DNA of 60,654 nt, counting the filler, from Dugesia japonica (taxonomy: Eukaryota): NCBI GenBank assembly GCA_001938525.1. It is 6 parts of 6 records of this genome, joined end to end, with 100 filler letters (N's around TTAATTAATTAA, not from the genome) between each part and the next. Parts side by side here need not be neighbours in the genome. Positions count along the whole stretch, not along the records: positions 49,287 to 60,654 come from MQRL01644432.1; 5 more parts are not named here. The stretch is one strand, 5' to 3'. The notes under the pieces are model-generated. The model had not been told where the DNA came from. It was given only the letters and a program-made list of their open reading frames with translations, and ran no database searches. This document shows positions 49,287 through 60,654 of this stretch, piece by piece. The position numbers and the translations under genes are program-made. The stretch's first letter is position 1, and every line of letters begins with the position of its first letter.

Positions 49287-51325
49287 GCATTTCATTATTA
49301 TTTCTTATAATTTAAAATATGAATTCAACGAATAAGAAATATATTAAAAAAATGGAAGAAAAATTTAGTAAAACAGGTAGAATATTTATTATTTTGTAAT
49401 TGCTTTTTAAAATTTTAAATTTAAGAATTCTAACAGATATATGCAAAGAACGAGGGTTGTTAAACGAAGAGAGACAACCATGCCTTCCGGATGTTATTAT
49501 CAAGCAATATATGGTAGCTGAATTTTGCACACCTGACTGTATTGGGTGTGCAAAGTTTAACCTGTATATTGCAATAAAGAATAATGCGTTCAAAATGAAC
49601 AAATTTAATAATTATTATTGTTTTATTTAATGTTTTAAAAAATAATAAATGTATCATTACTTTATCTTTGATTTATTTAGTTATTTATTTTCAGTTTTTT
49701 ATTTAGTTTTTTCTTTAAAAAAAAATAAAATTAACAAGATTTTTTTTCATAAATATTTATTTCAAAAAAAATTACATGAAGTAAACATTAAGCAAACATT
49801 AAGTTAACAAATTTAGATCGATTTTGTAATATTTTTAACTTTCCAAATGACTCCTACTGAATTAATGAACTTCTTGAAGCCTTTAATCTCAACTTGAATC
49901 ATACATTGACTGTCGTCTTCATATTGGTTCTTATACTTTTCTTTAAAACTAATATAAATAACCTCATTAACCTCAATTTGTCTGCTTAATCTTGCAAACA
50001 TAGCTTCCAGTATATTTCTACCCTTCTCATAAATTCTAGATTGAACCAAACTAAATTTTGATCTTTAATTTTTAATAAAAAAAATTACTTTGAATTCATA
50101 TATAATTGGAGTCTTTAAAAAGAACATCTTGTAATTATGGAAATCTGAAATTTTCCCTAGTTCCACAGTTATTGTTGACACGTTTTTCTTAGTGAGTTGA
50201 TTTTCTTGCACTTTTTGAGTTGTAAAAGTGATTAAAGTTATGCANACCTAGTTGCAATACACACATACTCGTTATTTGTGAGTTCCTCTTGGTAAGTATT
50301 TATTTTGTCAGTTATAATTGGTTACTGGAATTATATACTAGTTGCGATACACACATACTCTCTATATGTAAGTTCCTATTGGTAATTATTTACTATAATT
50401 GACATGATTGGTTATTGGGTTTATATAAAAGGACTTGTTTTTTAAAAAAATTCCCTTTTTACAAAATGAACACTTGTGAAATTGTGATTTTTGAAAACAC
50501 TGTCTAAGGAGAGGAAGAGCTTGAAAATGACATTAACCATGAAGAAATAGAAAATATAATGGATGCTAATGATAACGGAAAAATCGATATTAATGAAGGA
50601 ATAAATGAAAAATAAACTATTGAAGATGAAAAGATGGAAGATACATGTCATGATGGAGATGACTGTGATGGTGATGGCGGTTATTTTGAAATTGAAGACC
50701 AAAATTATGAAAATTATTATGGTAAAAGTTTAATTTAAAATTGGTTTATGTAATTATTTTTTAGAATTAGCGTTAGAAATAATACATGAAAATTTTCCAG
50801 ATTTACTTCATGAATATATGTTGTTGATGATTGAATATTTTAAGAATTTATTTCAGAAAAAAGCAATAGATATGTTTCAAGTGATGGACAATTTCATCAT
50901 AGAACTTCATGCGGGTTTCCCTTTCAATGAAAACAAGAACCAATATGAAGTCTTAAAAGATAAAATTTTGAAGATGAATGAAGAATATCATAAAGAAATG
51001 TTTAATTAATACATTTTATATAATTAAATGTTTTACTGGATAGTTGTTTTCTTTTTTATAATTAGAAATATATACGTTTTTTATAATACTAGGTAAACAA
51101 AAAAAACATTATTTTGAATAAATTAATTTATGATAACTAATTTCATTAAAATATATTTTGCATGGTGACCTCTTATTTCACGGTTAATATGCCAATAATA
51201 TACTCATAAACCCTATACAATCATGAAAATATTTTCTTATAAGTTTTTCATACAACTTAAGGTATATATGGAAAAGTCCCATGTTTTTTATTATTTTCTT
51301 TTCAGAAATAATCTCAACCAATATG

Positions 51326-51545
51326 TTTTTTATTAAAAATTGCAACACTAATGAGACTTTTTATTAAAAATTGAAACACTAATGAGACTTTTTATAAAAT
51401 AATTGCAACCCTAATGAAACTTTTTATTAAAAATTGCAACACTAATGATACTTTTTATTAAAATTTGCAACAGTAATGAGACTTTTATTAAAAATTGCAG
51501 CACTAATGAGAAATTTTATTTAAATTTGCAACACTAATATGCTTG
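51326..51545. repeat. ~30-bp minisatellite (TTTTATTAAAAATTGCAACACTAATGAGAC), about 7 copies
   Basis: Directly visible tandem units. Confidence 0.9.
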
Positions 51546-51682
51546 TTTTATAAAAAATTACTTAATTTTTTTAGTAATGAAAAATTTTCAATGTTTTTAT
51601 CATCTTGTAAAGAAAAGTTTTAATTTGAATATTGTATCATGTAAATATCACAAAGACTCCCCTGTTTGAAATTTTTTGGAAG

Positions 51683-54600
51683 CTATATTTTTATTACCGG
51701 ATCAAACGATTTAATAATATCGATTATTTTTTTATGACCTCGCTTTTTGGCATTACCTATCAGTTGATATCCTCTCTAAATTATCATTTATTAATAAATT
51801 ATTTAGTAAATAACAAATAAATTACTTCATAAGTTGCAGTGATATCACATTTGTTCTCTATCAATATTTTCACAATATCAATATGACCATTCTGACATGC
51901 CAAATGTATCGGTTGATATCCACTCTAAATTATCATTTATTCATAAATTATATAGTAAATAACAAATAAATTACCTTATCAGATGCATTGATATCACATT
52001 TGTTTTCAATCAATATTTTCACAATATCAATATGACCATTCTTGCATGCCCAATGAATCGGTTGATATCCATACTAAATTATCCTTTATTAATAACTTAT
52101 TAAGTAAATAAGAAATAAACTACTTTATCAGATGCATTGATATCACATTTGTTCTCTATCAATATCTTCACAATATCAATATGACCATTCTTGCATGCCA
52201 AATGTATCGGTTGATATCCATACTAAATTATCAATTATTAATAAATTATTTAGTAAATAACAAATAAATTACATAATTAGATACATTGATATCACATTTG
52301 TTTTCTATCAATATTTTCACAATATCAATATGACCATTCTTGCATGTCAAATGTATCAGATGATATCCTCTCTAAATTATCAATTATTCATAAATTATTT
52401 AGTAAATAACAAATAAATTACTAAATCAGATGCATTGATATCATATTTGTTCTCTATCAATATTTTCACAATATCAATATGACCATTCTTGCATGCCCAA
52501 TGAATCGGTTGATATCCATACTAAATTATCCTTTATTAATAACTTATTAAGTAAATAAGAAATAAACTACTTTATCAGATGCATTGATATCACATTTGTT
52601 CTCTATCAATATCTTCACAATATCAATATGACCATTCTTGCATGCCAAATGTATCGGTTGATATCCATACTAAATTATCATTTATTAATAAATTATTTAG
52701 TAACTAACAAATAAATTACATTATTAGATGCATTGATATTACATTTGTTTTCTATCAATATTTTCACAATATCAATATGACCATTCTTGCATGCTAAATG
52801 TATTGGTTGATATCCATTCTAAATTATCATTTAGTTATAAATAATTTAGTAAATAACAAATAAATTACTTCATTAGATGCATTGAAGTCACATTTGTTCT
52901 CTATCAATATTTTCACAATATCAATATGACCATTCTTGCATACCAAATGTATCGGTTGATATCCATTCTAAATTATCATTTAGTTATAAATAATTTAGTA
53001 AATAACAAATAAATTACATATTTATTAGATGCATTGATATCACATTTGTTCTCTATCAATATTTTCACAATATCAAAATGACCATTCTTGCATGCCAAAT
53101 GTATCGGTTGATATCCATTCTAAATTATCATTTATTCATAAATTATTTAGTAAATAACAAATAAATTACATCACTAGATGCATTGATGTCACATTTGTTC
53201 TCTTTCAATATTTTCACAATATCAATATGACCATTCTTGCATGCCAAATGTATCGGTTGATATCCATTCTAAATTATCATTTATTCATAAATTATTTAGT
53301 AAATAACAAATAAATTACATTATTAGATGCATAGATATCACATTTGTTCCCTATCAATATTTTCACAATATCAATATGACCATTCTGACATGCCAAATGT
53401 ATCGGTTGATATCCATACTAAAATATCATTTATTCATAAATTATTTAGTAAATAACAAATAAATTACATCACTAGATGCATTGATATCACATTTGTTCTC
53501 TATCAATATTTTCACAATATCAATATGACCAGTCATACATGTCAAATGTATCGGTTGATATCCATACTAAATTATTATTTATTCATAAATTATTTAGTAA
53601 ATAACAAATAAATTACACCACTAGATGCATTGATATCACATTTGTTCTCTATCAATATTTTCACAATATCAATATGTCCAGTCATACATGTCAAATGTAT
53701 CGGTTGATATCCATTCTAAATTATCATTTATTCATAAATTATTTAGTAAATAAAAAATAAATTACTTCATAAGTTGCAGTGATATCACATTTGTTCTCTA
53801 TCAATATTTTCACAATATCAATATGACCATTCTGACATGCCAAATGTATCGGTTGATATCCACTCTAAATTATCATTTATTCATAAATTATATAGTAAAT
53901 AACAAATAAATTACATATTTATTAGACGCATTGATATCACATTTGTTCTCTATCAATATTTTTACAATATCAATATGACCATTTTTGCATGCCAAATGTA
54001 TCGGTTGATATCTACTCTAAATTATCATTTATTCATAAATTATTTAGTAAATAACAAATAAATTACATCACTAGATGCATTGATATCNNNNNNNNNNNNN
54101 NNNNNNNNNNNNNNNNNNNNNNNNNNNNNNNNNNNNNNNNNNNNNNNNNNNNNNNNNNNNNNNNNNNNNNNNNNNNNNNNNNNNNNNNNNNNNNNNNNNN
54201 NNNNNNNNNNNNNNNNNNNNNNNNNNNNNNNNNNNNNNNNNNNNNNNNNNNNNNNNNNNNNNNNNNNNNNNNNNNNNNNNNNNNNNNNNNNNNNNNNNNN
54301 NNNNNNNNNNNNNNNNNNNNNNNNNNNNNNNNNNNNNNNNNNNNNNNNNNNNNNNNNNNNNNNNNNNNNNNNNNNNNNNNNNNNNNNNNNNNNNNNNNNN
54401 NNNNNNNNNNNNNNNNNNNNNNNNNNNNNNNNNNNNNNNNNNNNNNNNNNNNNNNNNNNNNNNNNNNNNNNNNNNNNNNNNNNNNNNNNNNNNNNNNNNN
54501 NNNNNNNNNNNNNNNNNNNNNNNNNNNNNNNNNNNNNNNNNNNNNNNNNNNNNNNAGATGCATTGATATCACATTTGTTCTCTATCAATATTTGCACAAT

Positions 54601-57430
54601 ATCAATATGACTATTCTTGCATGCCAAATGTATCGGTTGATATCCATTCTAAATTATCATTTATTCATAAATTATTTAGTAAATAACAAATAAATTACTT
54701 TATCAGATGCATTGATATCACATTTGTTTTCTATCAATATTTTCACAATATCAATATGACTATTCTTGCATGCCAAATGTATCGGTTGATATCCATACTA
54801 AATTATCATTTATTCATAAATTATTTAGTAAATAACAAATAAATTACNNNNNNNNNNNNNNTGATATCACATTTGTTTGCTATCAATATTTTCACAATAT
54901 CAATATGACCATTCTTGCATGCCAAATGTATCGGTTGATATCCAATCTAAATTATCATTTAATAATAAATTATTATTAGGTAGATGTGAGCGCACTAGCT
55001 CACTTTAAGTTAGTCTCTGCTCTTTAAAGTGATTTACTTAGTTAGTATCTCTCTGAGATATTTTTGATTGGTCTGTTTTAGGCAACCTTTGTTTATTTAA
55101 TTGTGAGGAGATAAAGTTTTTTCTTAATTTGCAACTATTTGGGCTTTAAATTTAAAATAAATAAATTTTTTTATATTCATTTAAACTAATTTTTTTTTGA
55201 AACTAGGATCATAGTGATCTAGTGTGCTGACATCAACTGTATAATTTACTATCGTGAATATAAAATTTTGGATCGGATCAGAGGTCTTGTCGGGTTTGCT
55301 TTTCGATCAGATATTTGATGAGATCAAATTTTTTTTGGAATTTATTTTTTTTTCCTTTTTTTTGAAAATGTTTTTTGTCTTTTTTCTATAAGCGATGCAC
55401 GATAACCCATAGAACAAATCGTAGAACAGATGATCTGTTATAATTATGGAACCTTTGAAAATCATAAACCATATAATTATTGAAAATATGAAATTAAACA
55501 ATCAATAAATTTATGATTTTTTTAATTTCATATTTACTTAATAGTTATTTTAAATAAAATTTTAATAAGACTTTAAAATTAATTTAATTTTAGGTAAAAT
55601 TAAAGGTCCCATTATTATATGGTATATGAAGTTTAAAGGTTACATATTTTTATGGTCAATGTTATTTAAAGGTCTAATTAATATGGTCAAAATGTGTCAA
55701 ATATGTGCTTAATCATATAAAAAATATGGCATTTATTGAATAACTAACATTTGTGTTGGAATTCCCTAAAATTTTGCGGATCTCAGTCTAGTTAATTATT
55801 AACGATGATGACTGATTGTTTTTAAAACAATTTCAGCGATGTCTAATTATGACCGGTTGTGAACGAATGGAACCACTGCTACTAGAGATGCACAAACCGT
55901 AAATCGAGTTTAGCCTAATTAAAGCTACGTAAACTGGTCGATAAGTTCAATTATGAACGGATTCGATTGTGTGATAACGGATCTTGACTGATTCGCTCCA
56001 TCGGACCGTGCATAACAGAGGATGAAATGAAATGGTATGAAAAGCAAACAAGACTGTTACTAAAACAATACATGAAAATAATTATTATTAATTTAAAATA
56101 ATTAATTTATAAAAATTAGAAAAAGATAAAGAAAAAAAATAAATTTTAAAATTCCAGACAAAAAAATTTATGTCGCGTCAAAAAAAGATAGAGAAAAGAA
56201 AAGGAAAAATAATTTTTAATTTCTCGCCAAAATAAATTATTTTTAAATTTCATACCAAAATATTTTTAAATTAAAACAAAACTTGAGCTCCCGCAACTAA
56301 TCAAACGCAGCTCAAAACCGACCAATAATAGGTAACTCATTTTGAAGCATAATCCCCTCCGGGGAGGAGGTCGATAACAGATCATCTGAGCTACGATTTG
56401 TTCTATGGATTAACGTGGATTGCTTATAAAAGAGACAAAAAAATTTAAAAATAAAATTTAAATTCCAACTAAAAATTTGATCCCATTAAATATCTGATCT
56501 GATCAAAAATTTTAAATCCACGATAACTAGTAATTTATACGGTTGATGTGAGCGTACTGAATCACTATGATTCTGACTTTAAAAAATTTTTTGTTTAAAT
56601 CAGTCAAAAAAATTAATTAATTTTAAATTTCCCGCAAAATATTTTCAAATTTAAACAATACCCGATCACTTCGCAACCAACCAANNNNNNNNNNNNNNNN
56701 NNNNNNNNNNNNNNNNNNNNNNNNNNNNNNNNNNNNNNNNNNNNNNNNNNNNNNNNNNNNNNNNNNNNNNNNNNNNNNNNTGTGCTCATATCTACTTACT
56801 ATTATTTTCCAAATATCAAATAAATTACAAATTTATCAGATGCATTGATATCACATTTGTTCTCTATCAATATCTTTACAATATTAATATGGCCATTCTC
56901 GCATGCCAAATGTATCGGTTGATATCCATTCTATATCATTATTTTTTCATAATTATTCAAAAATATACTTTCGTGAATAAATGAATATCGCATGGATATT
57001 TTAATATTAAATTCATCAATCTATCTCTGCCATAACGACAGGCATGATGTAAAATACTCCATGAATCTTTCTAAATGTAAGTAATTAATTATTGAATTTA
57101 TATAAAAACTTTACATCTTTTATCTGTAGAAATTCTAATTTAAATTTATTTTCAATTTCTTCNNNNNNNNNNNNNNNNNNNNNNNNNNNNNNNNNTTGAA
57201 AATCTCTAAAATTATTTCATAATAACATTTTACAAAATAAATTTTATCATTTTCCAAATATCGATATTTATTAATTAAATTTGTTTGAATCGGAAAATAA
57301 TCAAAATTCTTAAAACAATTTATGAAAACCAAATAAAACATTTTATTAAACCAGAAATTTCCAACATATTTCACTAGCTGAGCGATGACCATTGTCTCAT
57401 GTGCCGGTAGAAAAGAAGAAAAATTATATC
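51683..57430 (-). CDS. Ankyrin-repeat protein, one 33-aa repeat per exon
   Basis: Exons such as 51826-51924 (SGYQPIHLACQNGHIDIVKILIENKCDITATYE), separated by 50-nt phase-0 GT-AG introns at 149-bp period. Divergent N-cap exon 56969-57070 (KDSWSILHHACRYG...), C-cap exon 51683-51775 with stop, upstream non-ankyrin exon ~57115-57430. Confidence 0.92.
54980..56796. mobile_element. Non-autonomous long-TIR DNA element in an ankyrin intron
   Basis: TA|GGTAGATGTGAGC ... GCTCATATCTACT|TA; inverted similarity continues 55130-55445 versus 56375-56650; no ORF. Confidence 0.8.
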
Positions 57431-59170
57431 TGAAAATGCTGATTGAAACAAAATAACATTAAACATTTTTACATNNNNNNNNNNNNNNNNNNNNNNNNNN
57501 NNNNNNNNNNNNNNNNNNNNNNNNNNNNNNNNNNNNNNNNNNNNNNNNNNNNNNNNNNNNNNNNNNNNNNNNNNNNNNNNNNNNNNNNNNNNNNNNNNNN
57601 NNNNNNNNNNNNNNNNNNNNNNNNNNNNNNNNNNNNNNNNNNNNNNNNNNTGATATTTTATATTTTAATTTCCTATTCTTATCTATATTTGGTATTATTC
57701 TAAAGTTTTAATATATCACGTCAATGTGGTGTTTTATAATAATTATAAAAATAAATTTAAACTTATGCGTTAAAACTACATGTTTGATAAAAAAGATAAG
57801 ATAGTGCAAAAGTGAAAAATGTTAACTGCGACTCTAAATCTAATTTCCTGGTAAAATGCGACTTGAGAACCAAAAGATTTTTGAAAACCTTGATGTAATT
57901 GATTTATAAAGGAATCTCTGGTTGGACTAGCAGCTCCTTCTCTGCTGCTGATGTTTCATCATAATTCATTCTNGTTTCAACTGTTTGCAATACAAATATA
58001 TTTTCATCACCTTACATTTCTAAAATACAATTTTAATTCTATCTTTAAAAATAATAAAAGTTGTTAATAGATAAATAAATAAAAATACGATCAAAAATTA
58101 TTCTAACAATAATTGTAATTGTAAAAATAATCAATTTTATTATTCATCGAAAAATTAAAATAAAAAAGTACTTTTGATGTGAAACGCTTGAATCATCCCA
58201 AAACAAAATGATGTTTGAATGAGATTCCTTCCTAAATCCAAATGATAAAGATTAATTCAATAAAACTAATCTCGCCATTTATCGATTAATCCATCAACAA
58301 ATAACTCATTCACAAACCCAATAGAAAATTCTCCAAAAAATCTAAATAAAAATATCAATAAAATGAAAATTAATCCATCTCACAATCCAATCAAATATCG
58401 CCAATCTTTCATTGGATAGATCAAATAATTCAAACAATAATCAAGCGCATCAATTCTATAAAATCAATATCAAATATATTCTCATCAATCATCAAATATT
58501 ACGCAATTTTCTTCATTGATTTATCAGAATTATTTGACCTATATAGCATTGATTTTGTATAATCAATAATTTCCACTCGTCTGAATAAATAAAAATCAAT
58601 AAATGATAATTACAATAATTTATTTCCACTTACACTGCATCTCGGAAATATTGACGAAACACATTGATAACACTAAATAAATCAATTTCAACATAACAAA
58701 TNNNNNNNNNNNNNNNNNNNNNNNNNNNNNNNNNNNNNNNNNNNNNNNNNNNNNNNNNNNNNNNNNNNNNNNNNNNNNNNNNNNNNNNNNNNNNNNNNNN
58801 NNNNNNNNNNNNNNNNNNNNNNNNNNNNNNNNNNNNNNNNNNNNNNNNNNNNNNNNNNNNNNNNNNNNNNNNNNNNNNNNNNNNNNNNNNNNNNNNNNNN
58901 NNNNNNNNNNNAAAATCAATAATTATATATTTTATTTATTCACTTCATTTGGTACAAAATTTGTCTCAACGAATTTGTCTGTGATAAATTGAATTCATCT
59001 CGATACCACAAATACGTTCTGATAATTATCAAATTATTAGCAATATTAATAATAAATTTAATTAATTATTACAAATCATTATTTCTCAAATAATATTCAA
59101 CCAAATATTCATCATGATTATTCAAGCATTTAGTAAATGCGTCATCATTTCTACAATAAACTATAAATAA

Positions 59171-60230
59171 CTAATCAATATTATATTTCCACTTGATAAC
59201 TAATTTGATATATCCATCATTATAACAATAATAATCTGTTATTAATTGATCCATTTTCATTTTCTCTCCTTTTATATCCCAAAAACCATCGATATTCAAT
59301 CCAAATTTATTAAGTTCTAATTTCAACACAGAAAATTTAATATCTTTTTTAACAATCAATTGNNNNNNNNNNNNNNNNNNNNNNNNNNNNNNNNNNNNNN
59401 NNNNNNNNNNNNNNNNNNNNNNNNNNNNNNNNNNNNNNNNNNNNNNNNNNNNNNNNNNNNNNNNNNNNNNNNNNNNNNNNNNNNNNNNNNNNNNNNNNNN
59501 NNNNNNNNNNNNNNNNNNNNNNNNNNNNNNNNNNNNNNNNNNNNNNNNNNNNNNNNNNNNATAAACCCATTGATAACTCTCCTTCATTAATTCATTTTTT
59601 GATAATCTTTCACTAATGTAACCCTTCAAATCATTTAATTCATCAAATTTTGGTATATCAATATATGATTTTGTGATATTATTTTTGTTGTAAAAAATAT
59701 TAACTTCCATTTGTAAATAAATTGAAAAATCAAATTTGAATTTTGCGCTCAATAAAACAAATTNNNNNNNNNNNNNNNNNNNNNNNNNNNNNNNNNNNNN
59801 NNNNNNNNNNNNNTTTTTAACAATCAATTGAACAAATGATGTGATTGGTTCACTGACAAATAAATCCGCAATTAGTTCATCTCTATAAAATCATTAAAAA
59901 AATATAATTTCGTTAGTCCGACAAACTTTTCTAGAAAATCTTCCAAATAACCAATACGCATTTGTTCATTATCTCGCATGTTAATATATTTAATTAATTT
60001 GTTACAATCATTTAAAATGATATTTCNNNNNNNNNNNNNNNNNNNNNNNNNNNNNNNNNNNNNNNNNNNNNNNNNNNNNNNNNNNNNNNNNNNNNNNNNN
60101 NNNNNNNNNNNNNNNNNNNNNNNNNNNNNNNNNNNNNNNGTGATATTATTTTTATCGTAAAAAATATTAACTTTCATTTGGAATTAAATTGAAAAATCAA
60201 ATTTGAATATTGCAATTAATAAAACAAGTT
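59171..60230 (-). CDS. Hypothetical protein with tandemly duplicated, possibly ubiquitin-like domains
   Basis: M(E/K)VNIFY(N/D)KNNI occurs twice ~467 bp apart; GEKMKMDQLITDYYCYNDGYIKLVIK resembles a Ubl C-terminal pattern; many N gaps. Confidence 0.35.
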
Positions 60231-60654
60231 CTAATATTAAAAGAAAATTATCATTCAAGAAAATTATTGTTCAATATCTTTACTTTTGAATGTTGAAAAT
60301 TTTCCCAATTTTTTCAAAGCTTTCAAATCTTCAAAATCGTCATATTTGTAGTAAACCAGTTCGATGGTATTTTTATTTTTATGAATATTTTTTTCAGTTA
60401 AAAATTCCTTTTAATACGATTAAGAAAATTTAAATTTTCAATATTATAATACAATTGATGACTTAATTTTTCAATTGTTCTGATATTTTCAATTTGTTTT
60501 GAATTTTTGGTCTGATTTTTAATATTTTCTCCAGCTTTGTCTGTTGAATTTTTAAAATTAAAACTATTTTCAATTTTTCGCTCCGAATTTGTATTTTTTC
60601 CAGTGTGAAATTGTGCAAAATTTTCAATTTTTATCTCCAACTTTTGGTTATTTT

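What the first reader, a model, noticed from the sequence alone, without database searches (positions are those of the whole stretch)
51683..57070. DARPin-like ankyrin cassette array: one repeat per symmetric exon, homogenised introns, variation at binding-face positions
Seen: 15 complete cassettes from 51826 to 54066 (99-nt exon + 50-nt intron; two exons are 102 nt), more across and after the gap, all phase 0, between divergent cap exons. Scaffold residues are almost invariant. Changes cluster at the hairpin (SDK/SNY/TYE/SSD/SSG then Y/N/S/R) and helix 1 (L/W, A/T/V, KN/QN/MT). Established: these positions form the ankyrin target-binding face. Inference: any exon can be skipped, gained or lost in frame, giving a possible somatically or allelically diversified recognition protein, like repeat-shuffling immune receptors. 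The ORF track misses it.
Basis: partly seen in the sequence, partly recalled or inferred. Interest (0 to 1): 0.75.

Follow-up and report, generated by a model that had tools for sequence, protein, structure and literature searches.

The report
One-ankyrin-repeat-per-exon cassette gene
A minus-strand gene in an AT-rich eukaryote is built from at least 20 near-identical units, each one 33-residue ankyrin repeat in one 99-base exon plus a 50-base intron, differing mainly at the repeat's target-binding positions; it is one member of a large expressed family and resembles the one-repeat-per-exon "shuffling" receptors of brown algae, but nothing shows somatic diversification.

Summary
On the minus strand, 51826-54066 carries 15 complete 149-bp units (99- or 102-nt exon plus 50-nt GT-AG intron). 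More units lie beyond the gaps, between a diverged N-cap exon (57070-56969) and a C-cap exon (51775-51686, stop at 51683). Each exon matches Pfam Ank end to end. The nearest solved sequences are DARPins and consensus ankyrins.

Variation concentrates at the positions randomised in DARPins. Diversity there is 0.22, against 0.06 in the rest of the exon and 0.064 in the introns. pN/pS is about 3.3 there and 0.26 in the scaffold (permutation p 0.001-0.009).

RNA reads are strand-specific and joined at the predicted exon borders. However, 97% are only 95-99% identical to the locus, and its own 3' end has depth about 4 against hundreds on the cassettes. Expression therefore comes mostly from paralogous arrays. 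The more than 600 joint types cannot be read as exon skipping.

No spliced relative appears among the best 150 hits in 1.84 billion representative proteins. The N-terminal domain and the organism remain unidentified.

Best reading: a germline array evolving in concert, with diversifying selection on the binding face. This is an ankyrin variant of a known kind. Somatic diversification is unsupported.

The parts
57115..57162 (-). Fragment of an upstream coding exon (EEIENKFKLEFLQIKD), cut off by the assembly gap 57163-57195
   Evidence: It is in frame with the N-cap exon across a 44-nt GT-AG intron. Pfam gives no match.
57071..57114 (-). 44-nt intron (GTAAAG...TTTAG)
   Evidence: Sequence read directly.
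56969..57070 (-). N-cap ankyrin exon, 102 nt (KDSWSILHHACRYGRDRLMNLILKYPCDIHLFTK)
   Evidence: Pfam Ank_3 E 1.1e-6; coordinates.
56931..56968 (-). 38-nt intron (GTATAT...ATATAG)
56829..56930 (-). Cassette exon 1, 102 nt (NGYQPIHLACENGHINIVKILIENKCDINASDKF)
   Evidence: Pfam Ank 1-33/33, E 9.5e-10.
54947..56828 (-). First inter-cassette intron. Its two ends match the standard 50-nt cassette intron, and it is split by a roughly 1.8-kb foldback or transposon-like insertion with long inverted arms. It contains the gap 56685-56780.
   Evidence: The intron ends are compared with the cassette intron. The inverted arms are at 55107-55441 and 56229-56630.
54848..54946 (-). Cassette exon 2; its last bases are hidden by the 14-N gap 54848-54861
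   Evidence: It lies exactly 149 nt from the next exon start, so it is in register.
54699..54797 (-). Cassette exon 3 (complete), followed by its 50-nt intron at 54698-54649
54556..54648 (-). Cassette exon 4; 93 nt are visible and it runs into the 468-N gap
54067..54087 (-). The 3' end of a cassette exon emerging from the 468-N gap
   Evidence: It is out of register with exon 4 by 36 nt if the gap length is taken literally.
51826..54066 (-). Fifteen complete cassettes, each an upstream 50-nt intron plus a 99-nt exon; the exons at 54016-53915 and 53119-53018 are 102 nt
51776..51825 (-). Last 50-nt cassette intron
51683..51775 (-). C-cap exon (RGYQLIGNAKKRGHKKIIDIIKSFDPVIKI) with its TAG stop at 51685-51683
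   Evidence: An RNA-run contig ends its match exactly at 51775 and continues with 44 nt that lie elsewhere, which indicates splicing (table 8, record 5).
51540..51682 (-). Probable 3' UTR (the lower limit is approximate)
   Evidence: Stranded RNA depth is about 3.4-4 at 51536-51793 and zero below. Exact-match contigs cover 51465-51607 and 51634-51727.

Best explanation
This is a germline protein-coding gene on the minus strand of an AT-rich eukaryote (24% GC, 38-50-nt GT-AG introns). It encodes a long ankyrin solenoid: an N-cap, at least 20 near-identical internal repeats and a C-cap.

The array grew by repeated unequal crossing-over or replication slippage of a 149-bp unit made of one repeat exon and one intron. 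This is inferred from the sequence. It explains why introns and scaffold codons are about 90% alike and why every exon is phase 0.

The exon border falls at the tip of the beta-hairpin. The most variable codons (31-33 of one exon and codon 1 of the next) therefore flank each splice junction. Together with helix-1 codons 8-12 they form the canonical ankyrin binding groove.

Their nonsynonymous diversity exceeds both the synonymous and the intron diversity. The most likely cause is diversifying selection on a protein-recognition surface, while concerted evolution keeps the scaffold uniform. This too is an inference.

The locus is one member of a large, collectively well-expressed family. It is itself only weakly expressed. 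The binding target and the N-terminal domain are unknown.
For: - Array anatomy and intact frames.
- Each exon is a complete Pfam Ank repeat.
- A profile of 15 cassettes hits DARPins and consensus ankyrins best in the PDB, which fixes the register.
- Diversity at the 7 face codons is 0.218, against 0.061 for the rest of the exon and 0.064 for the introns.
- pN/pS is 0.244/0.074 at the face and 0.039/0.151 in the scaffold. Fisher tests give 0.043 against the rest of the exon and 0.007 against the introns. Permutation p is 0.001 for 7 codons and 0.009 for the 6 strictly DARPin-randomised ones.
- Some cassettes are identical or nearly so both side by side and far apart: 52669 = 52222 (0 of 149 differences), 53864 versus 51924 (2), 53715 versus 53566 (5). 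This indicates ongoing duplication or conversion.
- RNA depth with the first mate on + is 30-40 times that with it on -. In most stranded libraries that means minus-strand RNA.
- Joints lie at the exon borders, and a contig is spliced at the C-cap acceptor.
- 8771 of 9037 reads are only 95-99% alike, and depth at the 3' end is about 4 against 200-1300 on the cassettes. Most reads therefore come from paralogues.
Against: - The selection signal rests on 16 non-independent cassettes from one short-read assembly. Gene conversion can mimic or distort pN/pS.
- DARPin position 5 (exon codon 3, Tyr) never varies.
- Several scaffold changes are singletons that could be assembly errors.
- The cassette order and number are not independently verified, and two gaps interrupt the array.
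- A roughly 1.8-kb transposon-like insertion sits in the first inter-cassette intron, and the locus's own expression is low, so this copy could be decaying.
- No N-terminal domain, signal peptide or partner was identified, so 'recognition' is inferred only from the ankyrin fold.
Confidence: 0.7

Rival explanations
1. A splicing-generated repertoire. The symmetric cassette exons would be skipped in many combinations, so one gene yields many ankyrin surfaces, as reported for the LRR exons of brown-algal ROCO genes. This could hold in addition to the best explanation.
For: - All exons are phase 0 and of equal length.
- Donor-side exon bases vary, so the splice sites rely on near-identical intron signals.
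- RNA reads show joints that skip exactly one cassette: 51924 to 52124, 199 nt, CT..AC ends, 89 reads. More than 600 joint types are seen in all.
- Teng et al. 2024 (PMC11378527) report alternative splicing of one-LRR exons.
Against: - 97% of the laid reads differ from the locus by 1-5%, and many joints 'go back' or skip about 1.1 kb between look-alike exons. That is the pattern expected from paralogous arrays with other cassette orders and from ambiguous placement.
- No joint can be assigned to this locus.
Confidence: 0.2
2. A somatically or individually rearranged receptor, like lamprey VLRs or the recombination proposed for brown algae. Cassettes would be reshuffled in DNA within an individual.
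For: Only the modular architecture and the large variety of junction sequences in RNA support this (tables 5 and 5c).
Against: - No DNA comparison between cells or individuals was possible.
- The gene looks complete in the germline, with caps and intact splice sites.
- No recombination signals or donor cassette banks appear in the piece; all 19 cassette cores lie in one orientation in one array.
- In brown algae the proposal remains unconfirmed after more than ten years.
Confidence: 0.04
3. A partly artefactual assembly. The cassettes are real, but their number and order here are a chimera or collapse of reads from many paralogous arrays.
For: - The piece is a short-read scaffold with 1360 N in 11368 bases, and gaps abut the array.
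- The 468-N gap is out of register by 36 nt.
- One pair of cassettes is identical although three units apart.
- More than 1500 short contigs per run pile onto the array, and most fit two places.
Against: - The units carry enough private differences (5-19 per 149 nt) to be ordered.
- The flanks, the C-cap and its splice junction are recovered exactly in runs of other studies.
- The 14-N gap is in perfect register.
Confidence: 0.3
4. A structural or scaffolding solenoid, like the ankyrin-R or NOMPC repeat stacks, with no role in diversified recognition. The hairpin variation would be merely tolerated.
For: - Twenty or more repeats is typical of ankyrin-R (24) and NOMPC (29), and both appear among the PDB hits.
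- All hairpin variants are single-step neighbours of one codon (AAT to AGT, TAT or GAT).
Against: - Tolerated neutral change should not exceed intron and synonymous diversity, yet face pN is 0.24 against pS 0.07-0.15 and intron 0.064.
- Structural ankyrins have diverged, individually conserved repeats, not a homogenised array or a large paralogous family.
Confidence: 0.15

Closest known systems
[quoted passage not shown] 2012, PMC3341825; Teng et al. 2024, PMC11378527)
   Same: - Each repeat is encoded by its own exon of fixed length and phase, in long tandem exon-intron arrays.
- There is evidence of exon duplication and shuffling.
- Positively selected sites lie on the ligand-binding face.
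- The genes form a family and are transcribed.
- They prompted the same speculation about combinatorial or somatic diversity.
   Different: - The repeat type here is ankyrin (99-nt, phase-0 exons), not LRR (72 nt, phase 2) or TPR.
- The introns here are tiny (50 nt) and themselves near-identical.
- No ROC-COR or NB-ARC domain was found.
- No inactivated or reverse-strand cassette exons appear in the introns.
Fungal NLR ankyrin, TPR and WD repeats with high internal conservation (Dyrka et al. 2014, PMC4986451; Paoletti et al. 2007)
   Same: - Repeats are more than 85% identical over far more than 100 residues.
- Evolution is concerted.
- Variable or selected positions lie on the concave inner-helix and hairpin surface of the ankyrin stack.
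- The genes belong to families.
   Different: - In those genes, as far as I recall (not checked here), the repeats are not separated one by one by introns.
- They follow a NACHT or NB-ARC domain, which was not detected here; the upstream region is badly gapped.
- Repeat-number polymorphism could not be tested.
DARPins and consensus-designed ankyrin proteins (PDB 5le2, 6mol, 1n0r, 2qyj, 1mj0)
   Same: - They are the best solved-structure matches to the cassette profile.
- The architecture is caps plus identical internal repeats.
- Natural variation falls on the randomised positions 33, 2, 3, 13 and 14.
   Different: - This is a natural gene.
- Designed position 5 is invariant here.
- There is extra variation at helix-1 positions 10-11 and at position 31.
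- It has at least 20 internal repeats instead of 2-3.
- Consensus designs are the average of all ankyrins, so a high score does not mean relatedness.
Vertebrate ankyrin genes (ANK1/2/3), where most of the 24 repeats are encoded by single 99-bp exons (from my own knowledge of Gallagher et al. 1997; not checked here)
   Same: One 33-residue repeat per 99-nt symmetric exon.
   Different: - Those repeats and introns are old, diverged and individually conserved.
- The introns are long and unrelated to one another.
- There is no homogenisation and no family of arrays.
Lamprey and hagfish variable lymphocyte receptors
   Same: Recognition surfaces are built from interchangeable repeat cassettes.
   Different: VLRs are assembled somatically from flanking LRR cassette banks into an incomplete germline gene. 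Here the germline gene is complete, and no such banks or evidence of DNA rearrangement exist.

Membership tests
Ankyrin repeat (Pfam PF00023) | A 33-residue motif with G-x-T/Q-P-L/I-H and G-H...V..L core, matched over the full model above the curated cut-off | tested here: met
   Cassette exons score 31-40 bits against a cut-off of 21.1, over model positions 1-33 of 33.
Ankyrin repeat (Pfam PF00023) | Tandem stacking of several repeats with terminal capping repeats | tested here: met
   At least 20 cassette exons lie between a diverged N-cap (Ank_3, E 1e-6) and a diverged C-terminal repeat. The stacked fold itself was not modelled.
DARPin-like consensus ankyrin | Near-identical internal repeats close to the family consensus | tested here: met
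   Mean column identity is 87%, with 12 invariant columns. The top PDB hits are DARPins and consensus designs.
DARPin-like consensus ankyrin | Variation confined to positions 2, 3, 5, 13, 14 and 33 | tested here: inconclusive
   Variation is enriched there (permutation p 0.009). However, position 5 is invariant, and positions 1 (Asp), 10, 11 and 31 also vary.
Fungal NLRs with highly conserved ANK repeats | More than 85% identity between repeats over at least 100 residues | tested here: met
   Cassettes are 79-97% identical to the reference, 87% on average, over more than 600 residues. The criterion is from PMC4986451.
Fungal NLRs with highly conserved ANK repeats | A NACHT or NB-ARC nucleotide-binding domain N-terminal to the repeats | tested here: inconclusive
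   Pfam matched none of the upstream minus-strand open frames from 57088 to 60652 that were tested (about 15), and the word search was blank. But that stretch is about 23% N, and the exons there are undefined.
Fungal NLRs with highly conserved ANK repeats | Repeat-number polymorphism between strains | not testable with these tools
   This needs long reads from several individuals.
Brown-algal type exon-shuffling receptors (ROCO, NB-ARC-TPR) | Each repeat in a separate exon of identical length and phase, in tandem | tested here: met
Brown-algal type exon-shuffling receptors (ROCO, NB-ARC-TPR) | A ROC-COR or NB-ARC signalling core in the same protein | tested here: inconclusive
   None was detected upstream or downstream. 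The gaps prevent a firm negative.
Brown-algal type exon-shuffling receptors (ROCO, NB-ARC-TPR) | Inactivated or reverse-strand repeat exons inside the introns | tested here: not met
   All 19 cassette cores are on the minus strand and in register, and none lies in an intron.
VLR-type somatically assembled receptors | An incomplete germline gene plus flanking donor cassettes, with DNA-level rearrangement in somatic cells | not testable with these tools
   The germline gene appears complete, and no donor bank is present in the 11-kb piece. No tissue-resolved DNA was available.

The most novel reading that the evidence does not exclude
The organism may keep a natural library resembling a DARPin library. 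This would be a large, expressed family of one-ankyrin-repeat-per-exon arrays. Because the hypervariable hairpin codons sit on both sides of every splice junction, any exon gain, loss, exchange or skip creates new binding surfaces. That would amount to a combinatorial recognition repertoire, for immunity, allorecognition or as effectors, built on ankyrin repeats rather than LRR, TPR, WD40 or immunoglobulin domains.
Probability: 0.25. Interest if true: 0.8.

Novelty: new variant of a known kind. Interest (0 to 1): 0.55.

Why it matters
Repeat-cassette architectures that can diversify a binding surface quickly are known for LRRs (lamprey VLRs, brown-algal ROCOs), for TPRs, and for WD40, ANK and TPR repeats in fungal NLRs. 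This locus would extend the one-repeat-per-exon form to ankyrin.

It has micro-introns that are homogenised together with the exons, and its hypervariable codons sit exactly at the exon junctions. That makes the link between gene structure and surface diversification unusually direct.

No spliced protein of the family appeared among the best hits of the protein search, so it has probably escaped annotation. The hypothesis can be tested with long reads.

For protein engineers, it is a natural counterpart of the DARPin design principle.

Tried and rejected
- **Word searches:** the upstream frame 57196-57458(-) and the neighbouring frame 50734-51006(+) shared no words with any candidate.
- **Exact look-up:** the ORF 50818-51006 is not on record.
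- **Pfam:** blank on about 20 flanking open frames on both sides, so the N-terminal domain and the organism stay unknown.
- **Cassette profile against 1.84 billion representatives:** it returned only generic long ankyrin proteins. The best match to the cassette consensus was 19 of 30 residues. Named members were abalone and hemichordate proteins.
- **Metagenome scans:** an exact 26-mer found nothing. The profile found only generic ankyrins of 64% identity or less.
- **Rfam:** no match.
- **Reading RNA joints as exon skipping:** rejected, because the reads come from paralogues and look-alike exons make placement ambiguous.
- **A ciliate genetic code:** considered and set aside. The 149-nt unit is not a multiple of three, so splicing is required whatever the code.
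- **N gaps:** none was filled or looked up.


Full report
**What is there.**
The piece (49287-60654) is a gapped short-read scaffold of 24% GC, with 1360 N in 11368 bases. Tandem Repeats Finder reports a 149-bp period with 15.6 copies at 51758-54087 (91% matches, score 3759) and 2.8 more copies at 54556-54974. A 26-nt cassette core occurs 19 times with up to 3 mismatches. All 19 are on the minus strand, none lies outside the array, and 0 are expected by chance.

Read on the minus strand, every unit is AG | 99-nt exon | GTA...TTTAG with a 50-nt intron. There are fifteen complete cassettes between 54066 and 51826. All exons are phase 0 and free of stops. Exon GC is 0.30 and intron GC is 0.12. 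Thirteen of the 15 introns carry TACTAA or TACTTA at intron position 18.

**Gene model.**
- Upstream lie an exon fragment (57162-57115, cut by a gap) and a 44-nt intron.
- Next come a 102-nt N-cap ankyrin exon (57070-56969), a 38-nt intron and cassette 1 (56930-56829).
- The intron after cassette 1 begins and ends like the standard cassette intron. It is split by a roughly 1.8-kb insertion with long inverted arms at 55107-55441 and 56229-56630.
- Cassettes 2-4 follow at 54946, 54797 and 54648. After them comes the 468-N gap, then the main block.
- The last 50-nt intron leads to a diverged C-terminal repeat (51775-51686), which ends at TAG 51685-51683.

That makes at least 20 visible cassette exons plus two caps.

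**Gaps (tested first, as asked).**
- Across the 14-N gap the exon starts are 149 apart, so they are in register.
- Across the 468-N gap the exon starts (54648 and the inferred 54165) are 483 apart, which is 3 x 149 + 36. The gap length is only approximate, so the hidden cassette number and the frame continuity are unknown.
- The 96-N gap lies in the inserted element inside an intron.
- No gap was filled.

**Identity of the repeat.**
Single exons match Pfam Ank over model positions 1-33 of 33 (E 3e-10 to 2e-7). The N-cap matches Ank_3 (E 1e-6). A profile of 15 cassettes (A1: 87% mean column identity, 12 invariant columns) finds DARPins and consensus-designed ankyrins as the best solved sequences, namely 5le2, 6mol, 4o60, 1n0r and 2qyj.

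Those alignments fix the register:
- exon position 2 is the DARPin Gly4;
- position 3 is x5;
- positions 11-12 are x13-x14;
- position 31 is x33;
- position 32 is Asp1 of the next repeat;
- position 33 is x2;
- position 1 of the following exon is x3.

The exon border therefore lies at the hairpin tip.

**Where the variation is.**
Across 16 complete cassettes, nucleotide diversity is 0.094 in exons and 0.064 in introns. The most variable codons are 33, 1, 32, 11 and 23, and helix-1 codons 8-12 are also above average.

| Region | Diversity (pi) | pN | pS |
|---|---|---|---|
| 7 face codons (1, 3, 11, 12, 31, 32, 33) | 0.218 | 0.244 | 0.074 |
| Rest of exon | 0.061 | 0.039 | 0.151 |
| Introns | 0.064 | - | - |

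The face set was fixed beforehand from the DARPin design. For the share of variable columns, Fisher tests give p = 0.043 against the rest of the exon and p = 0.007 against the introns. A permutation over codons gives p = 0.001 for 7 codons and p = 0.009 for the 6 strictly randomised positions.

It is consistent with diversifying selection on the binding face combined with purifying selection and homogenisation elsewhere.

Caveats:
- The cassettes are few and not independent.
- Conversion distorts such ratios.
- DARPin position 5 never varies.
- All hairpin variants are single-step neighbours of AAT.

**Mode of growth.**
Some cassettes are near-identical although adjacent: 53715/53566 and 53119/52967 differ by 5 nt each. 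Others are near-identical although far apart: 52669 = 52222 with 0 differences, 53864/51924 with 2, and 52520/52073 with 8. This is the pattern of repeated unequal exchange or conversion within the array. Some assembly confusion cannot be excluded.

**Transcription.**
In an oligo-dT stranded RNA run (X22), 9037 reads lie on the array. Depth with the first mate on + is 30-40 times that with it on -. In most stranded libraries that means the RNA is minus-strand.

Joints sit at the predicted exon borders. A contig from another run matches 51698-51775 exactly and then leaves the genome sequence at the C-cap acceptor. So the family's transcripts are spliced at the predicted borders, and this locus's C-cap acceptor is used.

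But 8771 of the 9037 reads are only 95-99% alike. The majority carry the family-consensus base where this locus has private variants. One example is the third base of codon 10, where most reads differ in 10 of the 15 complete cassettes. Depth on this locus's own C-cap and 3' UTR is about 4, against 17-1324 on the cassette bins.

Most signal therefore comes from paralogous arrays, and this copy is weakly expressed. The more than 600 joint types (skips of 51-54, 199-202 and about 1100 nt, and 'goes back 844') and the roughly 390 junction-filling variants show a great diversity of cassette neighbours and hairpin codons in the transcript pool. They cannot be assigned to this locus or taken as exon skipping. 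Contig runs place more than 1500 short contigs on the array, against single-digit depth on the flanks.

**Relatives.**
A profile search of 1.84 billion representative proteins gives 55,587 ankyrin hits. Among the best 150 the closest repeat shares only 19 of 30 residues with the cassette consensus. A spliced family member with five or more cassettes would have ranked at the top, so none is in that library. Named hits are unrelated animal proteins. Metagenome scans found nothing close. Flanking frames have no Pfam match and no word-search relatives. The organism and the N-terminal domain remain unknown.

**Comparison with what is known.**
[quoted passage not shown] There each repeat has its own exon of fixed length and phase, exons shuffle, the concave-face sites are under positive selection and alternative splicing is reported. 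Somatic recombination was proposed for them but has not been found.

The nearest precedent in sequence behaviour is the 'high internal conservation' ANK, TPR and WD repeats of fungal NLRs, which have selected sites on the ankyrin concave face. Vertebrate ANK genes also have 99-bp one-repeat exons (my own knowledge), but those are old and diverged.

This locus differs from all of them in three ways together: ankyrin repeats, homogenised 50-nt introns, and hypervariable codons at the junctions. It also lacks any detected signalling domain. I therefore class it as a new variant of a known kind.

**Verdict.**
Modularity and binding-face variation hold. Somatic or allelic diversification is untested and not needed to explain the data.

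Noticed in passing
window 54976-56810: A roughly 1.8-kb non-coding foldback or transposon-like insertion sits in the first inter-cassette intron. Its terminal sequences are inverted (GTAGATGTGAGCGCAC... and ...TGTGCTCATATCTAC), and it has long internal inverted arms at 55107-55441 and 56229-56630. It contains an assembly gap. It turns a 50-nt intron into one of about 1.9 kb.
   Followed up: partly
window 51327-51538: A 31-bp minisatellite (6.8 copies, 87% matches) lies just beyond the apparent 3' end of the gene.
   Followed up: no
window 50248-50427: A 90-bp direct duplication (2 copies, 78% matches) in the downstream flank.
   Followed up: no
window 59673-59763 and 60140-60230: A 91-nt segment is repeated 467 bp apart at 89% identity on the upstream side. 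Each minus-strand copy contains a similar possible protein start, M(E/K)VNIFY(N/D)KNNI. This could be a duplicated 5' exon of this gene or of a neighbouring gene. It has no Pfam match.
   Followed up: partly
window 51826-54066 (cassette introns): The 50-nt introns are more uniform (pi 0.064) than synonymous sites of the scaffold codons (pS 0.15). This hints at constraint on these micro-introns or at conversion tracts centred on them. The numbers are small.
   Followed up: partly
window 51826-54016, third base of codon 10 of each cassette (e.g. 52044, 52193, 52640, 53090): Eleven of the 16 complete cassettes at this locus have TGC at Cys10, but most RNA reads carry TGT. This near-fixed synonymous difference marks the highly expressed paralogues as distinct from this copy.
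   Followed up: partly
window 53068 (loose ends): Many RNA reads match the 3' half of a cassette exon and then continue upstream into a sequence that translates to ...HACRYGRVGL, like this gene's N-cap. In paralogues the N-cap-like repeat therefore appears to be fused mid-repeat to a cassette.
   Followed up: no
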